From positions 62,001 through 126,000 of the IMG/VR virus record IMGVR_UViG_3300025121_000282: a DNA stretch of 64,000 nt; one strand, 5' to 3'. The position numbers and the translations under genes were made by a program. Positions 22,994 to 54,837 of this stretch are shown piece by piece. Within the stretch, counting starts at the first letter, position 1; every line of letters starts with the position of its first letter. Below the pieces are notes generated by a model. That model worked only from the letters and a program-made list of their open reading frames with translations. It had not been told where the DNA came from and did not search any database.

Positions 22994-23004
22994 CTTCTAA
23001 TTCC

Positions 23005-23198
23005 TTTAAAGAGTTGCTGGCTAGGACCACCATTCCTACTTTTCACCGGAGCTAGCGGTGCTGCTTTTCGTGGAAGTACTTCCTAAACACACCAACCTTG
23101 CTCACGAGTGGAACTGCGTGTTCCGGAGACAATCCGGTATGTTTAGTAGCTCGAAGTACCACACTTATGACAGCATTGGTGTCCAGCAACTCTTTAAA
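23005..23198. ncRNA. candidate structured RNA (16-bp closing stem)
   Basis: Perfect inverted repeat tttaaagagttgctgg (23005-23020) / ccagcaactctttaaa (23183-23198) in an intergenic gap. Confidence 0.35.
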
Positions 23199-23228
23199 AG
23201 AACCAGTCAGAAGTACATTATACAACAA

Positions 23229-24581: not shown

Positions 24582-24646
24582 CTTTATTCTCCTTCTTTAG
24601 AAGGGAAATGTAAGCGTCAGCCACATCGCTCTTTTCACAAATTAAG

Positions 24647-24968
24647 TGCCCGGTGAGGGAGTCGGACCCTCACGCTCTTGCGAGCGGCGGATTTTCTTCG
24701 CTCTACGAATTTCTTCGCTCTCCATTTTACTGGAGATTTGTGCGCTGGACTTTGTCTTCACCCGTTCTGGGTGGTCGCCGTTAAGTCTCTACACCTTCCT
24801 CCTTGTCAGGGAGGCTTGGCTCGGCGTTGTCTCGCTTCTTTTGAAGGAAGCAGGGAGTTCACCGAATTTGACGACATTCACTCTAGCCATTCCTGGCTAG
24901 GTGCTCAAATTGGATGTAGTCTCCATCCTACTTAAGTCCGCTGCGTCTACCGGTTTCGCCAACCGGGC
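24647..24968 (-). tRNA. trnL: tRNA-Leu(UAA), interrupted by group I intron
   Basis: Exons 24934-24968 and 24647-24695 join into a class II cloverleaf, anticodon loop CU-UAA-AA; no encoded CCA. Confidence 0.93.
24696..24933 (-). ncRNA. group I intron (IC3-like), 238 nt, in tRNA-Leu(UAA) after U34
   Basis: P/Q/R/S-like blocks AAATTCGGTGAA, CCGAGCCAAG, GAAGGTGTAGAGACT, AAAGTCCA; 5' exon ends in U, intron ends in G. Confidence 0.93.
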
Positions 24969-30168: not shown

Positions 30169-31590
30169 TTGAAAGCAAGAAGCACTATTCCCGAATCTTC
30201 AACTAATCCTGGCAAACTCCAGGCACTCAGTAATCTGTATCAGGAATATTTGAAGTACATGGAAGTTTGTGTGGGGTTGATGATTAAAGACAAGGTATTT
30301 AGTCTAAAGCCCTCAGAAAGAATGTTGTACTTTCCAAATTCCAGCACATTGACTGTGAATATAAAAGCCAGTTGTCAAATGCAGTCAATACAACTGGTTA
30401 ACAGTTGGGTAGCTGGTGTTTATGTTAGAATTTTAAGGAAGTATATCGGAAAGCAAAAATTTATTGATTCAGAAGCTAAACAACTTTATACGATCGGAAA
30501 ATATCGTCTTACTCATGGTGGTAAATTTGGAAATGCTGAGGTTTCCCAAAAATTAGTTGACCTTTATTGGTCTTGGGTTTGGAATCCCGAAATTGTGGGC
30601 AATCCTCCAAGAATCACTTACAAAATCCCAATGAGGATGACAGAGCACACGGTTGTTGTTGAACCACCAAAAAACACCGTTCATTTTAATGGTTTGTGGT
30701 TAAAGTTTTCTTCCCTGGTTTCAAAACAGCGGATTTCAATTCCCCTCAAAGTCACACCACACCTCCATCGGTTTGTTGGTTTGGCAAACATTGCTCTTAC
30801 AGTTTATGTCAGAAAGACGCGCATTGGGTGGCAGTTTCTCTTTACTGACAAATCTGAGGAACCCACTTTTGATGGTTCAGTGGGTAAGGTTGGAATAGAC
30901 GTTGGTTTAAATACTTTAGCTGCTACCAGCAGTGGAGAACTACATGGGTATAAATTTAAAAAGAAATTTGAGTATTTAAAAAAGAGGGTACAAGACGCAA
31001 GAGCAAATCGCCAAAGACAGGGTTTAAAGGATGACTCTTTAAAACTTTGGAAACTAGAACAACGCTTAAGTGGTCAGATCAAAACGGCTGTTGGTTCCAT
31101 TGCTAATAAACTTGTCAAGAAATATAAAGACCACACATTTGTCGTTGAAGATCTTGACCTCTCAGGATGTAAGGGTTCAAAGCGTTTTGCCTACAAAGCT
31201 CTTCAAAGCTCTTTAGCCCGAAAGGCTGTGATCGAGAAAATAAATCCGGCCTACACTTCTCAACAATGTCCAAGTTGCGGGTGCATTGATAAAAATAACA
31301 GAAACGGGATAAAATTTTCTTGTAAATCATGTGGTCGAAAAGCTCATGCCGATTTTGTTGGCGGGTTCAATATTCTCAGACGTTCTGAGAATAAAAATAT
31401 TGGGCTGAAAACGTCACCAAAAGAAGCAAAGGTAATTTTGAGAGAGCGATACCTTAGAAATAGGAACAGTTCCTCAAAACTCCCTGGTCGTAAGACCAAA
31501 ATAAAGCGCGCTTGTACGGACAAGCCAGAGACTCACTACGGAGAAATGCCGCAAAGTCTCAAATCAGGCTCAACTGAAAAGTTAACCTGA
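30169..31590 (+). mobile_element. tnpB: TnpB (IS200/IS605/IS607-family RNA-guided nuclease), no transposase in window
   Basis: RuvC-I GIDVG, RuvC-II VEDL, NPAYTSQQCPSCG...CKSCG, RuvC-III HAD; antisense to neighbours. Confidence 0.88.
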
Positions 31591-36360: not shown

Positions 36361-36663
36361 TTAGTTACGAAGATTGAGGACAAAAGAGGCTAGATCGGGG
36401 GGCATGGCATCATGGGGAACAGTGTCCGCACGACGAATCATTTCTGAACGGAGAAGAGCCTTGTGGTCAGGGTCGGCAGAAGACGCATATGACATCTGCA
36501 TGTTCCTGATTTCTGATATAACCCCGTCCTGGAAAGCTTGAGAGTTCTTGAACACCTCTCTCCGGGTGTCTTCTTCTGCAGCCCCGAAGAGCTTAAAGGA
36601 CACCAGACCCAGGCCTCTTGCCCCAAAGGCAAGGAGGGCCAGTACGAGTAACGCAACTACCAC
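36361..36663 (-). CDS. membrane-anchored protein upstream of the lipoprotein
   Basis: N-terminal TM; RREVFKNSQAFQDG. Confidence 0.6.
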   Translation of the reverse strand: MVVALLVLALLAFGARGLGLVSFKLFGAAEEDTRREVFKNSQAFQDGVISEIRNMQMSYASSADPDHKALLRSEMIRRADTVPHDAMPPDLASFVLNLRN

Positions 36664-36715
36664 AACTATGAGCCAGTTGTAGGCCTCTTTGCGGTCTTCT
36701 CGTCACTGCTCAGTA

Positions 36716-37156
36716 TTAGACATTTTGCAGTTCGCTTTCTACAGTTTTAACCGACCACTTTTGCACACGTATTGTAATCCCAAATGGTGATTGGGTGATT
36801 TCACTTTTTGCGTTTATGTGTAATTCTTTCAGCGACTTGTTGATGGCATGAACAAGTACTTCGAATGGCCCAAGCCTTATGTTTTCCAGTTGAAGTTTAC
36901 TAATAAATGTAGTAGTCTCTTCCACTTCCTTTACAGGGAATTCGTGAAACTTGACCCCTCCAATAATTACAGCACCATCCACCTGAGTTGCAGAATTCCA
37001 GCTTGTAATCCTGGTTTCTACCTCTGGAATACTTTCCAGTCGTAGACGTATTTTGACATTGCTGATGCCAAGTGCATTCCACGGTGGGAACAACGTGAGT
37101 GTGGTCCCTGCCAGCGTGCCGACACTCTCATTACCTATGTATACTTCTGCATTCAT
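36716..37156 (-). CDS. hypothetical protein
   Basis: 146 aa ORF. Confidence 0.55.
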   Translation of the reverse strand: MNAEVYIGNESVGTLAGTTLTLFPPWNALGISNVKIRLRLESIPEVETRITSWNSATQVDGAVIIGGVKFHEFPVKEVEETTTFISKLQLENIRLGPFEVLVHAINKSLKELHINAKSEITQSPFGITIRVQKWSVKTVESELQNV

Positions 37157-37170
37157 TGCAGTACTCCCAA

Positions 37171-37455
37171 TTAGTCTATGTGTTTTGGCAATGACGGAAT
37201 TATATCTGACAATCTGAATATAGTAGGGTCAGACAAGTGTAGGTTTGCCCGATTCCAGTCTTCCAATTCATTTAGCTTGCGTATGCCTAACTCAGTAGGA
37301 CGATAAGAGCCGCTAATTCTGTTTTTGTGGACCAGTCCTGCCAAGCACAGTTGGTGGGCCACACCCTGGTAATACAACCCCCACACAGGAGCAGTATGGA
37401 CAATATGACGAAGTACCTGATGGTAGTACCTATAGTGTTTTATTTCGCGTTTCAA
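37171..37455 (-). CDS. small winged-helix-like protein (paralog of 35188-35415)
   Basis: QLCLAGLVHKNRISGSYRPTELG. Confidence 0.55.
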   Translation of the reverse strand: MKREIKHYRYYHQVLRHIVHTAPVWGLYYQGVAHQLCLAGLVHKNRISGSYRPTELGIRKLNELEDWNRANLHLSDPTIFRLSDIIPSLPKHID

Positions 37456-37662
37456 TTAGATGCCCCCAAATAGTAGCATTGGACTATGTGCTGGGCACCT
37501 GTCCGCATTTACCAAGTCTCCGAATATGTTATGCTCACAGAAGCATAGGGGTGTGCAACAGGTTGGATTGTGACATGGCTCAGGTTTGCCATCCTCTTTA
37601 ATTAAAAGAGGGAGACTACAAATTAGACATCTGGGCATGCTGCCTCGATTGTAATAAGCCAT
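37456..37662 (-). CDS. small Cys-rich protein
   Basis: CLIC, CHNPTCC and CFCEH motifs. Confidence 0.4.
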   Translation of the reverse strand: MAYYNRGSMPRCLICSLPLLIKEDGKPEPCHNPTCCTPLCFCEHNIFGDLVNADRCPAHSPMLLFGGI

Positions 37663-37686
37663 TGAAAGAAACCACCTGGAGAAAAA

Positions 37687-37769
37687 TGGAGCCGGGTGTG
37701 GGATTCGAACCCACGGTGTGGGATTCCGCCTTACAAGGGCGGTGCCGTCGACCGCTTGGCTAACCCGGC
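37687..37769 (-). tRNA. trnT: tRNA-Thr(UGU) with expanded variable region
   Basis: G1-C72/C2-G71, loop CU-UGU-AA, U73, CCA; 11-nt variable region. Confidence 0.85.
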
Positions 37770-37794
37770 AGAAACACAATTGTACATGGCAATT

Positions 37795-37965
37795 GGAAAT
37801 GCTGATTTTGAAGGCCCCAGGACTTCCACCTGGACACCACTTTTGATCGTGGCTGCTAGCGCAGACTCTAGAATCTGCGGCCAGTGTTGGGCACCGCTTA
37901 ATGACCACTTGGCGGGGCACAGAGCACCGGTCTTACAATAGGCCTTCAAAATCAGCACTTCTCCA
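37795..37965 (-). ncRNA. candidate multibranch ncRNA (~170 nt)
   Basis: 16-bp perfect stem 37801-37816/37941-37956 enclosing several hairpins. Confidence 0.5.
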
Positions 37966-37998
37966 GTGCCCAGGCGTTACAAAGTGTCCGTACTTTCC

Positions 37999-38519
37999 GG
38001 ACTGTCACCCCTTCCTCAAGCAAGCTGCCTTGTAGGTGCATACTTGAGAATTTGGTCAGGCCCAGAGTTGGAACCTGTGACTCAAACAGCTAGCTAGGCC
38101 GTTAAAGTCAAGTACCCAATGGCGAAGCACATGCCATCAGGAGGGTGTGGAACCTGCTGTGCTAACAGGGCAGAGAACCGGGTCTGCGGACCGGTTCACA
38201 ATAGCCACTCATTTGAGCCTTAGGCTTTCGCCACGTAGTCCTGCCGGAAAGTCTCATGGGAAATGGCATCCCACTTTTCATCGTAGGTTGAAGTCCACGG
38301 CTTTGTCTTCCGATGCACCTTTTAGTGCTGAGGGCGGGTGACTCCCTTTCGGTCGTAAAAACCGAATCTTGCCAACACCAACATGGTTATTGCAACCCGC
38401 CCGAACACCCCATGCGGGGCTCAAATGCAGGGTGCTCTGCTATCAACCACTAAGCAGATTCCTGTGAGCGGAGTAGGCCTTTTAGTTGCCTAGTCCCGGC
38501 TTTTATACGGGACAGTCCC
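37999..38519 (-). ncRNA. candidate large structured ncRNA (~520 nt)
   Basis: Terminal gggactgtc/gacagtccc pairing, about ten short internal hairpins, no credible ORF. Confidence 0.5.
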
Positions 38520-38527
38520 TAGGGGAA

Positions 38528-38992
38528 CTAAACCTTTGCAGTTCTGGCGCGCTTGAAACCTAGCAGGCTGATTTGATTGATCCTGGCCTTGTAAAGCACG
38601 CCACCACTCTCGCCACGAGCTTCCAGGAAAGCAATACCGGTGGCGACACTTTCAATCAGGGCATCCAATTCTATGTTCGATAAATGATCAGCCCGGTCAA
38701 ACCTTTCCCAGGCTTTTTTGACGCTTTGATTGCTGATCATCTGCTTGGGGTTGGACACCTCAGCACGAATCAAATCATTGGTTTCCATAGTTCTTGTGTC
38801 ATTGCAATGTGAGAAGGCGTCTATTCGCTCCCTCAAGATCTCGCTGTACGCAGTCATATGGGTTATTTGGAGTACAATCCGCGCCCGTTCGTGTTCCTTG
38901 AGTTTGGAGAATATTTCATCGTTGATGAGAAAGGACAACTTGGCGATCCTTTTGTCTAGTTGTTCCTTCTCGTCCAAAATCTTCTCTATCAT
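38528..38992 (-). CDS. crAss001_48-like N-terminal domain fused to a repeated phage domain
   Basis: EKEQLDKRIAKL...QITHMTAYSEILRERI; C-terminal half similar to 40361-40582. Confidence 0.6.
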   Translation of the reverse strand: MIEKILDEKEQLDKRIAKLSFLINDEIFSKLKEHERARIVLQITHMTAYSEILRERIDAFSHCNDTRTMETNDLIRAEVSNPKQMISNQSVKKAWERFDRADHLSNIELDALIESVATGIAFLEARGESGGVLYKARINQISLLGFKRARTAKV

Positions 38993-39037
38993 CTGGGACT
39001 CCGTGGATATAAAAACCTAGACCTCAGGGGGCTGTAT

Positions 39038-39295
39038 TCAGACCTTCTCCATAGGCTCTACACCCCATCTACACTCCCCGTTCCCACTTTTTGATCTCAG
39101 TGAGAGTGTGGAAACCAACACCGGCTTGTCTTTCAGTGCGGCCAACTTGACTGCATGCTGAAAGCGAGCCATGAAGGGGGTGCTGTCATCCACCAGTTCC
39201 ACCTCAAACCCTGCGGCCTTTAAAGCCTCATTGATAATCAGGGCTATGGTGGTTTTACCCTCACCGGCCTCGCCTGAAATCTGTACCTTAAGCAT
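39038..39295 (-). CDS. small P-loop-containing protein
   Basis: ISGEAGEGKTT. Confidence 0.55.
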   Translation of the reverse strand: MLKVQISGEAGEGKTTIALIINEALKAAGFEVELVDDSTPFMARFQHAVKLAALKDKPVLVSTLSLRSKSGNGECRWGVEPMEKV

Positions 39296-39536
39296 CTGGA
39301 ACTCTTTCGAAAAACGATGGTTAGTGGGCTGAACTAGGAGACATCAACAGCCCCGTAGGAAGCACTCCTCAGTTTTAAAAAGGCGCGTTACGACAAGTTG
39401 GCACTCCAAGATGCGTACGCATTTGAAAACTAACCTGTCTTCCCTTTTGAAAAAGCACACCAGGAGGGACTCGAATAGAGTGGTAATCTTTTTACAGTTC
39501 ACTCTATTCAACCCCTATCAGCTTGTGGACCTGGAA

Positions 39537-40062
39537 ATGAAACTCACTAATTGTACTAACTGTGGTGACTCCACCACAAATCCAAGATTTTGTTCTAACT
39601 CGTGTTCGGCATCATGGGGCAACAAACTAAAGCCCCCATGTCCCAATGAAGAAGAAATGTAAACGTTGTGAAGTTATTATTCCCAGCAGAATAACTTATT
39701 GCACCAAATGTCAAGACCACTTTAAATCAAATACTAAGCGATGGAAAAACGAAACACTGGGTACACTACAGGCACGCCGAGTGTATCAGTCCAACTCACA
39801 AATTCGAGATGATGCTCGTGTGGTAGTGGACAAGCAGGGGTGGGTCAAATGCTGTGCGGTGTGTGAGTACTCTTTACACGTGCAAGTGTGTCACGTTAAA
39901 GCCATCAAAGACCACACGCCAGACACTATTATCTCGGCGATAAATGACCCATCCAACCTGATTTTGTTGTGTTCCAACCACCACTGGGAATTTGACCATG
40001 GCCTCTTGGACATTAAAGAAATTCGTGCTAGGCAGGGATCGAACCTGCGACCACTCGCTTAG
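39537..40062 (+). pseudogene. HNH endonuclease with N-terminal Zn finger, frameshifted at a C5 run (~39633)
   Basis: MKLTNCTNCG...FCSNSCS in one frame, then KKKCKRC...HVQVCH...NLILLCSNHHWEFD; 3' end overlaps tRNA-Arg. Confidence 0.75.
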
Positions 40063-40311
40063 CTTACCACTATAACTTTCGTTACTCTCTTGTGGAGATT
40101 TGTGGCCTGGACTTTGTCTTCACCCGTTCTGGGTGGCCCCCGTCAAGTCTCTACACCTTTTCCCGTTTAATAGGGAACTTGGCTCGGCGTTGTCTCGCTT
40201 CTTTTGAAGGAAGCAGGGAGTTCACCGAATTTGAGGGCATTCACACTAGACATTCCTATCTAGGTGCTCCTATTTCAAAGGCGAGCGCTCTATCCGCTGA
40301 GCTACTAGCAC
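40024..40311 (-). tRNA. trnR: tRNA-Arg(UCU), interrupted by group I intron
   Basis: Exons 40278-40311 and 40024-40062 give loop CU-UCU-AA; A20, G73; no CCA. Confidence 0.9.
40063..40277 (-). ncRNA. group I intron (IC3-like), 215 nt, in tRNA-Arg(UCU) after U34
   Basis: Same P/Q/R/S blocks as the Leu intron; terminal G; covarying P3. Confidence 0.9.
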
Positions 40312-40360
40312 ACAAAATCAATTTGAAAATAGTTACTAGGGAACAAAAGAAAGTTGAGTG

Positions 40361-41563: not shown

Positions 41564-41669
41564 TTAAGTATCCCTATTGGGTTGTCAAAGACACCATTTT
41601 GCGTTTGAGCTTAATAAGACCGCTAGTGAGGCCCTTGAAAATCAGTGTGTAAGAGTGTAGGAACAGTCG

Positions 41670-41972
41670 TGCGCCCACCTGGACTTGAACCAGGAACCGT
41701 GGCGTTATGCAATCCACTTCGGCTTTCGCCGCTCTTCCGTTGCTGAAAGATTTGTGGTCTGGACTATCCCTTAACCGTGTTCCTTTATCGGAATTTAGGT
41801 TCTCCGTGTCTAGTCTCTACACCTTCCCTTTGCTTAAAGGGCTTGGCTCGGGATTGGCATCAGCATAACCTGTTAAGCGTTCCCCGAATTTACGGAGTTG
41901 TCACGCAAAAGTTTCCTTTTGCGCAGCCCTTAAACTCAAGCACCCCGCTCTGACCATTTGAGCTATGGGCGC
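41670..41972 (-). tRNA. tRNA(CAU), elongator Met or Ile2, interrupted by group I intron
   Basis: Exons 41939-41972 and 41670-41709; loop CU-CAU-AA; G1-C72 paired; no initiator GGG/CCC. Confidence 0.88.
41710..41938 (-). ncRNA. group I intron (IC3-like), 229 nt, after U33 of tRNA(CAU)
   Basis: AAATTCGGGGAA, CCCGAGCCAAG, GAAGGTGTAGAGACT, GATAGTCCA; P3 CTCCGT/ACGGAG; terminal G. Confidence 0.9.
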
Positions 41973-42207
41973 AAAAGTCCCTACACTCTTACACACCTGA
42001 TTTTTCACAGATCCCAATCAATTATTTAGGGAGTGGCACCACCCCGGTGTCAGGATTTCAGCAATGTTAGAACCGGGTCATTATAGCTGAACCTGTAGTG
42101 CGGGCCAGTTATAACCCTGTCACCTGCGTCAGTCCGAGGGGGTCAGGAACTCCTGGAGCAGCATTTCGCCCGGATTGACAAGAATTCGGTTCTTCGGGAG
42201 CATCGTT

Positions 42208-53576: not shown

Positions 53577-53813
53577 TTATGAGTGGCGCCCGCTGTCACA
53601 CTTTTCTCTTTTGAAAGAATCCGCACCACAGATGTGACAGAATCGATTCCAATTTGGCATTTTGAATTTATATTTGCGTCCGGACGGGTCTCTTGCAGTG
53701 ACCATGCTTTTTCCTACTTCTCTCCTATAATAGAAGGTACTTATAGCAAACGCACCGCCCGCCAATCCTACAAGAAAAGAGCATGATGCTACATAGACCA
53801 TTACAGCAGTCAT
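53577..53813 (-). CDS. small membrane protein with Cys motif
   Basis: N-terminal TM; CHICG. Confidence 0.5.
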   Translation of the reverse strand: MTAVMVYVASCSFLVGLAGGAFAISTFYYRREVGKSMVTARDPSGRKYKFKMPNWNRFCHICGADSFKREKCDSGRHS

Positions 53814-54583
53814 ACTATCTCCAGGTTGGACCCCATCTTGTCTATGATCTGCTGGAAAGTGAGGTCACACAACTCGTCCTTCCAGTCTCCCACAAAGTAT
53901 AACTTTCTAGAACCCCGTACAACACCAAAAAGAATTGGGTCTTTCAAGGCTTCCCGGTCTTTCTTGAGGGTGCCTCGATTTTCGGGGTCATAGTGCAGCA
54001 CCACATAATTGTCGAACAACTTCAATTCATCGCACTTTACTTTTGCTTCTACTGCTTCGTTGGGTATAGGTCTTACAAAATTTTTGATCCAGTCCAGACA
54101 CAGGGCCCTGTCGGCCACAGCCGTAAATTGCAGTAATTGCTTCTCAGAAATATACTTCTTCATCCCCAAAGCAAAAAGAGTATTTTCAAACTTACGTACT
54201 TCAGACTCTTCGTCTATACTATCCACTAGAGAGGTCTGCCCCGCCAAAACAGCCCTCCCCCTCAATTCCAAGACTTTATTTTCCCTATCCTCGAAGATTT
54301 TGAGTTCTTCTGGATTTAGTAAAATCTGTTCGAAAATCTGTTTGATTTTGACAGGAGGTGTAATCTTCTCCTTTCTATAAAAAAGTCGTTTGTACCACGG
54401 TGGCCTTGGTATCGAACCATTTTCTACAGAAAAACTCCCCACAGAAATAAACGTATCTCTGATGTTTATAGTGTCCAAAGATTTCTGGACAAAATTCTTG
54501 GGTAGAGAGAGGTCCACCTCAAATCGATTGAAAATTATAAGAGAATCAGGCGGGTTAGGTACACCTAGCGTGGAGATCGGCAT
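53810..54583 (-). CDS. hypothetical phage protein
   Basis: ATG at 54583 overlaps the upstream TAA; DPILFG...LYFVGDW. Confidence 0.65.
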   Translation of the reverse strand: MPISTLGVPNPPDSLIIFNRFEVDLSLPKNFVQKSLDTINIRDTFISVGSFSVENGSIPRPPWYKRLFYRKEKITPPVKIKQIFEQILLNPEELKIFEDRENKVLELRGRAVLAGQTSLVDSIDEESEVRKFENTLFALGMKKYISEKQLLQFTAVADRALCLDWIKNFVRPIPNEAVEAKVKCDELKLFDNYVVLHYDPENRGTLKKDREALKDPILFGVVRGSRKLYFVGDWKDELCDLTFQQIIDKMGSNLEIV

Positions 54584-54837
54584 TACTGTCTCTTTTTTGC
54601 TCTGCCATTGGGGCAAATACACGGTCCTTGAACTGTGACCCGCTGATGCCCAGGAGGAAGACCGCATGGAGGAAATGGTGTGATTACAGCTAGGTACCCT
54701 GTGTTGCCGCACAAGCCGCACAGAGGAGTTGGAATGTGTGGTGTTGCATTGTTGATGCACACCATTACAATGAACTCTTCCCACAAATTAGATGCGTCGC
54801 CCATAAAATCATCCCGCTTCCTCGAAGCTATTTTCAA
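54583..54837 (-). CDS. hypothetical Cys-rich protein
   Basis: CGLCGNTG and CICPNG motifs. Confidence 0.5.
   Translation of the reverse strand: MKIASRKRDDFMGDASNLWEEFIVMVCINNATPHIPTPLCGLCGNTGYLAVITPFPPCGLPPGHQRVTVQGPCICPNGRAKKRQ

What the first reader, a model, noticed from the sequence alone, without database searches (positions are those of the whole stretch)
37795..37965. ~170-nt multibranch RNA on a 16-bp stalk between the large RNA and tRNA-Thr
A perfect gctgattttgaaggcc/ggccttcaaaatcagc stem encloses hairpins ccagg/cctgg, ccac/gtgg, gcaga-(c/t)...tctgc and ccgc/gcgg. It may be a separate small RNA or the 3' domain of a ~730-nt transcript processed together with tRNA-Thr.
Basis: seen in the sequence. 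Interest (0 to 1): 0.6.

Follow-up and report, generated by a model that had tools for sequence, protein, structure and literature searches.

The report
Stalk-bracketed spacer RNA in phage tRNA island
A 17-21 bp RNA stalk enclosing 124 nt lies between a new, conserved ~550-nt structured RNA and tRNA-Thr in an uncultivated 315-kb groundwater phage; only the stalk is statistically real, it is missing from the one related phage lineage found, and it most likely serves as a cutting or punctuation site in a long RNA precursor rather than as an ornate RNA of its own.

Summary
The inverted repeat is real. It is 17 bp perfect (37800-37816 / 37941-37957) and 21 bp if one G.U pair on the minus strand is counted. 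About 0.01 such repeats are expected by chance in the genome. The four inner hairpins exist, but the 124-nt interior folds no better than shuffled sequence (z = -1.07 on both strands).

The window comes from a 314,886-bp T4-like virus record from groundwater. The element is single-copy, matches no Rfam family, and is not a tRNA. It is identical across independent assemblies that are 99.8-100% alike, so no covariation test was possible.

In the only diverged relatives found (L014, L015), the upstream large RNA is 79% conserved with compensatory changes. Homology stops at 37976, and there a tRNA-Leu(CAA) follows within 2 nt instead of the element. The element is therefore a lineage-specific module, not a conserved 3' domain of the large RNA.

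Two more long stalks lie in the same tRNA island. One brackets a complete intron-containing tRNA 4-5 nt from its ends.

Best reading (about 0.4): a double-stranded RNA processing stalk, RNase III-type, that separates the large RNA from tRNA-Thr. A stand-alone small RNA and a neutral rearrangement scar remain open. The more interesting object is the neighbouring large RNA.

The parts
37941..37961 (-). 5' arm of the stalk in the minus-strand RNA (perfect core 37941-37957)
37796..37816 (-). 3' arm of the stalk (perfect core 37800-37816). The only strain SNP in the element, 37797 A>G, lies in the outermost extension.
37817..37940 (-). 124-nt interior. It has a 10-nt single strand, a long irregular arm (37880-37932), an 8-bp hairpin with a CUAG loop (37860-37879), a hairpin at 37834-37856, and a 5-bp/7-nt-loop hairpin that abuts the stalk (37817-37833). 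Its fold energy is not above chance.
37957..37975 (-). Linker between the conserved end of the large RNA and the stalk. Read from 37975 downward, its first 13 nt match the 5' end of the L014 tRNA-Leu(CAA) at 9 of 13 positions. This is a possible remnant and is weak evidence.
   Evidence: read from the alignment
37770..37795 (-). Linker to tRNA-Thr, with a small CAAUUG/CAAUUG hairpin (37777-37795)
37687..37769 (-). tRNA-Thr(UGU), 83 nt, with an enlarged variable loop and an encoded CCA
37976..38527 (-). Large structured RNA with no Rfam match. It is 79% identical to L014:702-1279. Between the two lineages there are 10 compensatory and 17 one-sided pair-preserving changes. The minus sense is favoured by 31 kcal/mol in RNAalifold.
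41645..41996 (-). Sister stalk I3: 20-nt arms (about 30 bp with a bulge) that bracket a class I tRNA split by a group I intron, lying 4-5 nt from the tRNA ends. The motif CUGAUUUUSAAGG, also found in the stalk of the finding, lies beside its 3' arm.
23001..23202 (-). Sister stalk I2: 20-24 bp enclosing 162 nt in an apparently intergenic gap. Whole element z -7.5; interior z -3.1.

Best explanation
The element is a lineage-specific, stalk-bracketed spacer inside a long minus-strand precursor. The order along that precursor is: sponge-like gene, large RNA, element, tRNA-Thr, small Cys-rich gene. The functional part is the 17-21 bp double-stranded stalk.

Inferred mechanism: once transcribed, the stalk forms a helix about two turns long. 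A host double-strand-specific RNase (RNase III-type) cuts it. The cut sets the 3' end of the large RNA and frees a short 5' leader plus tRNA-Thr for RNase P. It also releases the ~124-150 nt interior as a by-product or minor small RNA. In the sister lineage this punctuation is supplied by a tRNA-Leu that directly abuts the large RNA.

Shown here: the stalk is real and far beyond chance; the element is absent from the sister lineage; the interior fold is not above chance; and there are other long stalks in the same tRNA island, one bracketing a whole tRNA.

Inferred, not shown: transcription of the locus, cleavage of the stalk, and the identity of the nuclease.
For: 1. Stalk statistics. The stalk survives in the minimum-energy fold of the whole 761-nt region.
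2. The interior is not structured beyond chance, so the signal lies in the helix.
3. Homology with L014 and L015 ends at 37976, and a tRNA-Leu starts 2 nt later there. RNase P would define the large RNA's 3' end in that lineage. The window phage lacks that tRNA at this site and has the stalk instead.
4. Three long stalks lie in the 23-42 kb tRNA island. I3 brackets an intron-containing tRNA 4-5 nt from its mature ends, an arrangement like rRNA processing stalks.
5. All three stalks carry their single imperfection as A.C on the + strand, which is G.U on the - strand (read). This fits selection at the RNA level on the minus strand.
6. The helices are 21, 24 and about 30 bp long. All reach the roughly 20 bp that RNase III needs (established knowledge, not tested here).
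7. Every flanking gene and RNA is on the minus strand, and there is no promoter-like site on the minus strand within the RNA region.
Against: There is no expression or end-mapping data; no RNA run holds the locus. No covariation test is possible. The phage encodes no RNase III and the host is unknown. The strain SNP at 37797 gives C.A on the minus strand and G.U on the plus strand, so the outer 4 bp are not strictly kept. A perfect 17-bp repeat could equally be a young DNA-level palindrome. With transition bias, the 3-of-3 G.U orientation has a chance probability of up to about 0.125. The 13-nt motif shared between I1 and I3 could be coincidence (expected about 0.02 exact matches, noticed post hoc).
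Confidence: 0.4

Rival explanations
1. Neutral or recent rearrangement scar. The region between the large RNA and tRNA-Thr is a recombination hot spot visited by homing endonucleases. On this reading the palindrome and its filling are a by-product of cassette replacement, with no function of their own.
For: The element is lineage-specific and has no homolog anywhere. The same interval in L014 holds a different 858-nt filling: tRNA-Leu, a spacer, a tRNA fragment and an HNH gene. The L014 tRNA-Leu/spacer module lies 13 kb away in the window phage. A strain in run X9 has tRNA-Thr replaced by 76 other bases. An HNH gene lies at 39646-40062. The interior fold is at chance level. A possible 9-of-13 remnant of the tRNA-Leu 5' end lies at 37963-37975.
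Against: A 17-bp perfect repeat does not arise by chance. Similar stalks recur around other RNA genes and carry a minus-strand G.U imperfection. The element is invariant across strains that differ elsewhere, although overall divergence is too low (0.04-0.19%) to tell.
Confidence: 0.25
2. A stand-alone functional small RNA of ~130-170 nt whose multibranch fold matters, for example a regulator or a decoy in an anti-defence/tRNA island. It would be released from the precursor like the stable species 1 and 2 RNAs of the T4 tRNA cluster.
For: The whole-element fold has z about -6, and four hairpins radiate from one junction. It sits in a tRNA island of a T4-like phage (rIIA/rIIB), downstream of a Sequestin-family sponge gene. 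The sister stalk I2 has a significantly structured interior (z -3.1).
Against: The interior z is -1.07. There is no Rfam match at E<=10. No homolog exists, so there is no covariation. The element is absent from the sister lineage.
Confidence: 0.2
3. A 3' peripheral domain of the large RNA, giving a ~730-nt mature RNA.
For: It is contiguous with the large RNA, 19 nt from its conserved end. Large phage RNAs such as GOLLD and ROOL have variable regions (paper 10.1101/2024.12.08.627333).
Against: The domain is missing in L014 and L015, while the rest of the RNA is 79% identical. There is no significant complementarity between the interior and the large RNA (z -1.9).
Confidence: 0.07
4. A decayed or derived class II tRNA (tRNA-like pseudogene or decoy). 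On this reading the stalk is an over-long acceptor stem, followed by D-like, anticodon-like, long variable and T-like arms.
For: The arm order and the 5-bp/7-nt hairpin abutting the 3' strand of the stalk resemble a class II tRNA. ARAGORN at a 60% threshold forces a 'tRNA-Leu with a 52-nt intron' onto 37808-37948. The sister lineage has a class II tRNA-Leu at this position.
Against: ARAGORN at default settings finds nothing. The Rfam tRNA model gives no hit at E<=10. A class II tRNA model built here scores tRNA-Thr at 35.4 bits and the element at <=3 bits. There is no significant sequence similarity to any of 14 tRNA sequences (12 tRNAs and the two exons of the intron-containing tRNA). The T-like loop lacks the UUC motif.
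Confidence: 0.05
5. A miniature inverted-repeat transposable element, or a small protein-coding gene.
For: It has 17-bp terminal inverted repeats. ORFs of 75 aa (minus strand) and 81 aa (plus strand) overlap it.
Against: It is single-copy in the 315-kb genome and has no target-site duplication (read). The ORFs run into tRNA-Thr. A search with the overlapping 154-aa ORF 37456-37920 (minus strand) found only the real 68-aa downstream gene.
Confidence: 0.03

Closest known systems
RNase III processing stalks that bracket RNAs in polycistronic precursors (bacterial 16S/23S rRNA stalks, phage T7 early-RNA sites, the T4 tRNA-cluster precursor)
   Same: A helix of about 20 bp or more, formed by sequences flanking an RNA inside a longer transcript next to tRNAs. 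The sister stalk I3 brackets a tRNA a few nt from its ends.
   Different: Cleavage was not shown and the host and its nuclease are unknown. The bracketed 124 nt has no recognisable function. There is no sequence similarity to any known site. This comparison rests on my own knowledge of those systems.
Stable species 1 and species 2 RNAs (rnaC/rnaD) in the phage T4 tRNA gene cluster
   Same: Small non-tRNA RNAs of unknown function that lie among tRNA genes of a T4-like phage and are released by processing of the tRNA precursor.
   Different: blastn of the locus against 50,697 phage records matched only tRNA-Thr, so no homology was detected. The T4 RNAs are not enclosed by a long stalk (my own knowledge, not checked here).
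GOLLD and ROOL large ornate phage RNAs (relevant to the neighbouring large RNA)
   Same: A several-hundred-nt, heavily structured RNA that is phage-encoded and beside tRNA genes (paper 10.1101/2024.12.08.627333).
   Different: The Rfam GOLLD and ROOL models give no match even at E<=10 in the window or in L014. Only two lineages are known. Multimer formation is untested.
tRNA punctuation and the mascRNA-type tRNA-like 3'-end processing of long RNAs
   Same: In L014 and L015 a tRNA that directly abuts the large RNA would set its 3' end through RNase P. The element occupies that position in the window phage.
   Different: The element fails every tRNA test, so a different nuclease would have to act.

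Membership tests
tRNA (Rfam RF00005 / class II tRNA) | Cloverleaf scoring above threshold with a tRNA covariance model or ARAGORN | tested here: not met
   ARAGORN at default settings finds none. Rfam gives no tRNA hit at E<=10 on 201 nt. The class II model R1 scores <=3 bits against 35.4 bits for tRNA-Thr. Only ARAGORN at a 60% threshold forces a model.
RNase III-type processing stalk | A near-perfect double-stranded helix of about 20 bp or more, formed by sequences flanking the excised RNA | tested here: met
   21 bp with one G.U on the minus strand. The helix is kept in the fold of the full 761 nt.
RNase III-type processing stalk | Staggered cleavage within the helix by RNase III in vivo or in vitro | not testable with these tools
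   No RNA run holds the locus. The phage has no RNase III gene. The host is unknown.
GOLLD / ROOL (element as a domain of such an RNA) | Match to the family covariance model | tested here: not met
   There are no hits at E<=10 in window 36500-40000 or in L014:600-2400.
GOLLD / ROOL (element as a domain of such an RNA) | Phage-encoded, next to tRNA genes, with covariation-supported ornate structure | tested here: inconclusive
   The context criterion is met. Covariation is met for the large RNA only. The element itself has no comparative data.
MITE / small transposable element | Multiple copies and a target-site duplication flanking the terminal inverted repeats | tested here: not met
   It is single-copy. 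No direct repeat flanks the arms.
Retron msr-msd RNA | Inverted repeats flanking the ncRNA, with an adjacent reverse transcriptase gene | tested here: not met
   Inverted repeats are present, but none of the nine neighbouring ORFs matches a reverse transcriptase in PHROGs. Downstream lie tRNA-Thr and a 68-aa Cys-rich gene.
Group I intron | Match to RF00028 | tested here: not met
   There is no hit in the element. Three copies nearby do match, at 35-45 bits.

The most novel reading that the evidence does not exclude
The stalk of the finding, together with I2 and I3, may mark a phage-specific system of stalk-bracketed RNA cassettes. In this system helices of 20 bp or more would excise, and perhaps circularise or stabilise, individual RNAs. 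These would include an intron-containing tRNA and at least two unknown small RNAs, cut from a long transcript that also carries a previously undescribed ~550-nt ornate RNA. On this reading the 124-nt interior would be a new small RNA class working with that large RNA.
Probability: 0.15. Interest if true: 0.65.

Novelty: new variant of a known kind. Interest (0 to 1): 0.35.

Why it matters
Taken alone, the element is a modest finding: a probable processing helix with a filler of unproven function. Its value lies in the context it exposes.

An uncultivated 315-kb groundwater phage carries an RNA-dense island. The island holds six tRNAs found by ARAGORN, two more tRNAs split by group I introns, and a third group I intron. 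It also holds three long stalks and a ~550-nt covariation-supported RNA with no Rfam family, all beside an anti-defence sponge-like gene.

If the stalks are cleavage sites, they show how such phages punctuate long RNA precursors where no tRNA is available to do it. The junction after the large RNA is a swap point for cassettes. The large RNA is a candidate new relative, by lifestyle, of GOLLD and ROOL.

Tried and rejected
Homolog searches for the element or the large RNA that found nothing new:
- blastn against 50,697 phage records matched tRNA only.
- Exact-pattern scans of IMG/VR used the stalk, a 20-mer from the large RNA, and the paired CAGGTTCCA motif. None hit.
- A scan of JGI metagenomes returned only the window's own contig.
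- A scan of GTDB genomes returned nothing.
- Whole-record blastn of three IMG/VR relatives found through a neighbouring protein gave nothing below E 0.3.

Protein routes:
- The small Cys-rich protein found only itself.
- A spurious ORF over the large RNA found nothing.
- An exhaustive HMMER search with the 154-aa ORF that spans the element found only the real 68-aa gene.
- The upstream 154-aa protein (window 38528-38992) had no relatives in IMG/VR.
- The 529-aa protein gave only 38-42% relatives.
- Cluster variants of the sponge-like protein gave contigs 99.8-100% identical, which are useless for covariation.

Reads: only DNA contigs were available, with no RNA. One run holds a strain with tRNA-Thr replaced, but its contig stops at 37822.

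Other negative checks:
- Local alignment of the element to the L014 spacer was not above shuffles.
- Alignment to 14 tRNA sequences (12 tRNAs and the two exons of the intron-containing tRNA) gave only a 10-mer, in a different register.
- RNAduplex of the interior against the large RNA or against tRNA-Thr was not significant.
- No large non-coding gap lies beside the tRNAs of the distant relative L002.
- The promoter scan found none on the minus strand in the RNA region.

Full report
**Setting.** The window is bases 62001-126000 of a 314,886-bp virus record. It was recovered repeatedly from groundwater and soil metagenomes in five studies. It encodes rIIA/rIIB-like proteins and other phage families. 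Its closest cultured or IMG/VR relatives share only about 40-56% protein identity.

The finding lies in a gap without credible genes, about 37663-38527. It is flanked on the minus strand by a 154-aa Sequestin-family (PF21825) gene at 38528-38992. That family was recently described as phage sponges for immune signals. On the other side is a 68-aa Cys-rich gene at 37456-37662, which is conserved in a relative. tRNA-Thr(UGU) is at 37687-37769 on the minus strand.

**Observation.** The quoted arms lie at 37801-37816 and 37941-37956. The perfect repeat is 17 bp and extends to 21 bp with one A.C on the plus strand, which is G.U on the minus strand. Shuffled genomes give about 12 perfect repeats of >=12 nt with gaps of 30-700 nt. 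A 17-mer is therefore expected about 0.01 times per genome.

The 171-nt element folds with z -6.2 on the minus strand and -5.75 on the plus strand. When the stalk is removed, the 124-nt interior gives z -1.07 on both strands. A first cut that clipped 2 nt gave -0.6 and -0.8. Only the stalk is a statistically supported feature.

**What it is not.**
- Rfam gives nothing except tRNA-Thr, even at E<=10 on 201 nt.
- It is not a tRNA. ARAGORN at default settings finds nothing. A class II tRNA model built here scores tRNA-Thr at 35.4 bits and the element at <=3 bits. Only ARAGORN at a 60% threshold forces a 'tRNA-Leu with a 52-nt intron'. There is no significant similarity to any of 14 tRNA sequences, namely 12 tRNAs and the two exons of the intron-containing tRNA.
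- It is single-copy in the genome and has no target-site duplication, so it is not a MITE.
- No reverse transcriptase is adjacent.
- ORFs that overlap it run into the tRNA, and public gene calls there are artefacts.

**Comparative evidence.** All strain-level copies are 99.8-100% identical. The single SNP in the element, 37797, lies in the outermost stalk extension.

The only diverged relatives came from Logan contigs L014-L016. They were reached through a 68%-identical homolog of the upstream protein. Synteny runs as follows:
- The sponge-like gene is 71% identical at the nucleotide level.
- The large RNA is 79% identical (window 38533-37976).
- tRNA-Thr and the small gene are 72% identical.
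- The next 2.7 kb are about 78% identical.

Homology stops exactly at 37976. In L014 and L015 a tRNA-Leu(CAA) begins 2 nt later. In L014 it is followed by a 110-nt spacer, a tRNA 5' fragment, an HNH endonuclease ORF and then tRNA-Thr. Nothing in that 858-nt filling aligns with the element above shuffle level. The L014 tRNA-Leu/spacer module is instead related to window 24604-24695, which lies 13 kb away. One strain in run X9 has tRNA-Thr itself replaced by 76 other bases.

The interval after the large RNA is thus a swap point for cassettes. The element is a lineage-specific occupant, not a conserved domain of the large RNA. The first 13 nt after 37976 match the tRNA-Leu 5' end at 9 of 13 positions. 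This hints at replacement of an ancestral tRNA-Leu, but it is weak evidence.

**The large RNA is real.** The 761-nt region folds with z -6.3. RNAalifold on the window, L014 and L015 gives 172 pairs. Between the two lineages there are 10 compensatory and 17 one-sided pair-preserving changes, against 21 disruptions. Slid controls give 0-3 compensatory, 5-12 one-sided and 38-52 disruptions. The minus sense is favoured, -185.7 against -154.4 kcal/mol. No Rfam family, GOLLD and ROOL included, matches it in either lineage. No further homologs were found.

**Other stalks.** Perfect inverted repeats with arms >=15 nt number 7 in the genome against about 0.2 expected. Four of them lie in the window's tRNA island.
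- I3 (41645-41996) brackets a class I tRNA split by a group I intron (RF00028, 40.9 bits, E 6.5e-9). Its arms lie 4 and 5 nt from the tRNA ends, and the helix extends to about 30 bp with a bulge.
- I2 (23001-23202) is a 24-bp stalk around a 162-nt interior that is itself structured (z -3.1).

In I1, I2 and I3 the single imperfection is A.C or C.A on the plus strand, which is G.U on the minus strand (read). The 13-mer CTGATTTTSAAGG occurs only in the arms of I1 and beside the 3' arm of I3.

**Mechanism proposed.** The stalk is a double-stranded RNA processing or punctuation site on a polycistronic minus-strand precursor. Cleavage by a host RNase III-type enzyme would separate the large RNA from tRNA-Thr. 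In the sister lineage, RNase P acting at the abutting tRNA-Leu would do that job.

That a helix of about 20 bp suffices for RNase III is established knowledge, not tested here. The phage has no RNase III gene, and no RNA data exist. I rate this reading at about 0.4. The rivals are a neutral rearrangement scar (0.25), a stand-alone functional small RNA (0.2), a 3' domain of the large RNA (0.07), a tRNA-derived relic (0.05), and a MITE or coding sequence (0.03).

**Verdict.** As an object in its own right the element is of modest interest. The neighbouring large RNA and the recurring stalk-bracketed RNA genes deserve follow-up.

Noticed in passing
window 37976-38527 (-); L014:702-1279; L015:1590-2161: A ~550-nt structured RNA with no Rfam family. 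It is 79% conserved between two phage lineages, with 10 compensatory pair changes, and starts directly after the stop codon of a Sequestin-family gene. It resembles GOLLD and ROOL in lifestyle (phage-encoded, beside tRNAs) but not in sequence. An invariant hairpin loop, UAGCUAG (window 38090-38096), contains a self-complementary 6-mer that could mediate kissing-loop self-association. That last point is speculation.
   Followed up: partly
window 41645-41996 (-): A class I tRNA interrupted by a ~205-nt group I intron (RF00028, 40.9 bits, below the gathering score). ARAGORN misses it, it has no encoded CCA, and it is bracketed by a 20-30 bp stalk 4-5 nt from its ends.
   Followed up: partly
window 24650-24968 (-) and 40099-40319 (-): Two more group I introns (45.1 and 35 bits). 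The first lies in the anticodon loop of a tRNA-Leu(UAA), as in cyanobacteria and plastids. The two introns share a 178-nt stretch at 88% identity (24731-24906 and 40093-40269). The host gene of the second intron was not identified.
   Followed up: partly
window 23001-23202 (-): An apparently intergenic 24-bp stalk enclosing a 162-nt interior that is significantly structured (whole element z -7.5, interior z -3.1). It has no Rfam match and is a better small-RNA candidate than the finding.
   Followed up: partly
window 37456-37920 (-): Public assemblies annotate a 154-aa protein (P0011, 19 contigs) that runs through tRNA-Thr into the element. The real gene is the 68-aa Cys-rich protein at 37456-37662, conserved in L014:2245-2454.
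   Followed up: yes
L014:1476-2169: In the sister lineage a tRNA-like 5' fragment is followed by a 216-aa HNH endonuclease ORF whose 3' end overlaps tRNA-Thr. This looks like a homing-endonuclease insertion in the tRNA array.
   Followed up: no
genome 284600-284674 (outside the window) and window 30169-31590, 53810-54784: ARAGORN calls a tRNA with anticodon CUA, an amber-suppressor type. Two transposase-like ORFs (phrog_506, phrog_10081) lie in the window.
   Followed up: no
L025:2068-2232 (genome 205067-205231) and poly-C/poly-G tracts at L025:612-642 / 1265-1288: Another long inverted repeat (28-nt arms, 89% complementary, 109 nt between them), nested in a 12-nt repeat. It lies in a gap between divergent ORFs, with long homopolymer C and G runs nearby. 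There is no Rfam match.
   Followed up: no
window 37693-37778, run X9: A low-depth strain variant replaces the tRNA-Thr interval (84 nt) with 76 unrelated bases while keeping diverged flanks, including the start of the stalk arm. The contig ends at 37822, so the rest of the element in that strain is unknown.
   Followed up: no
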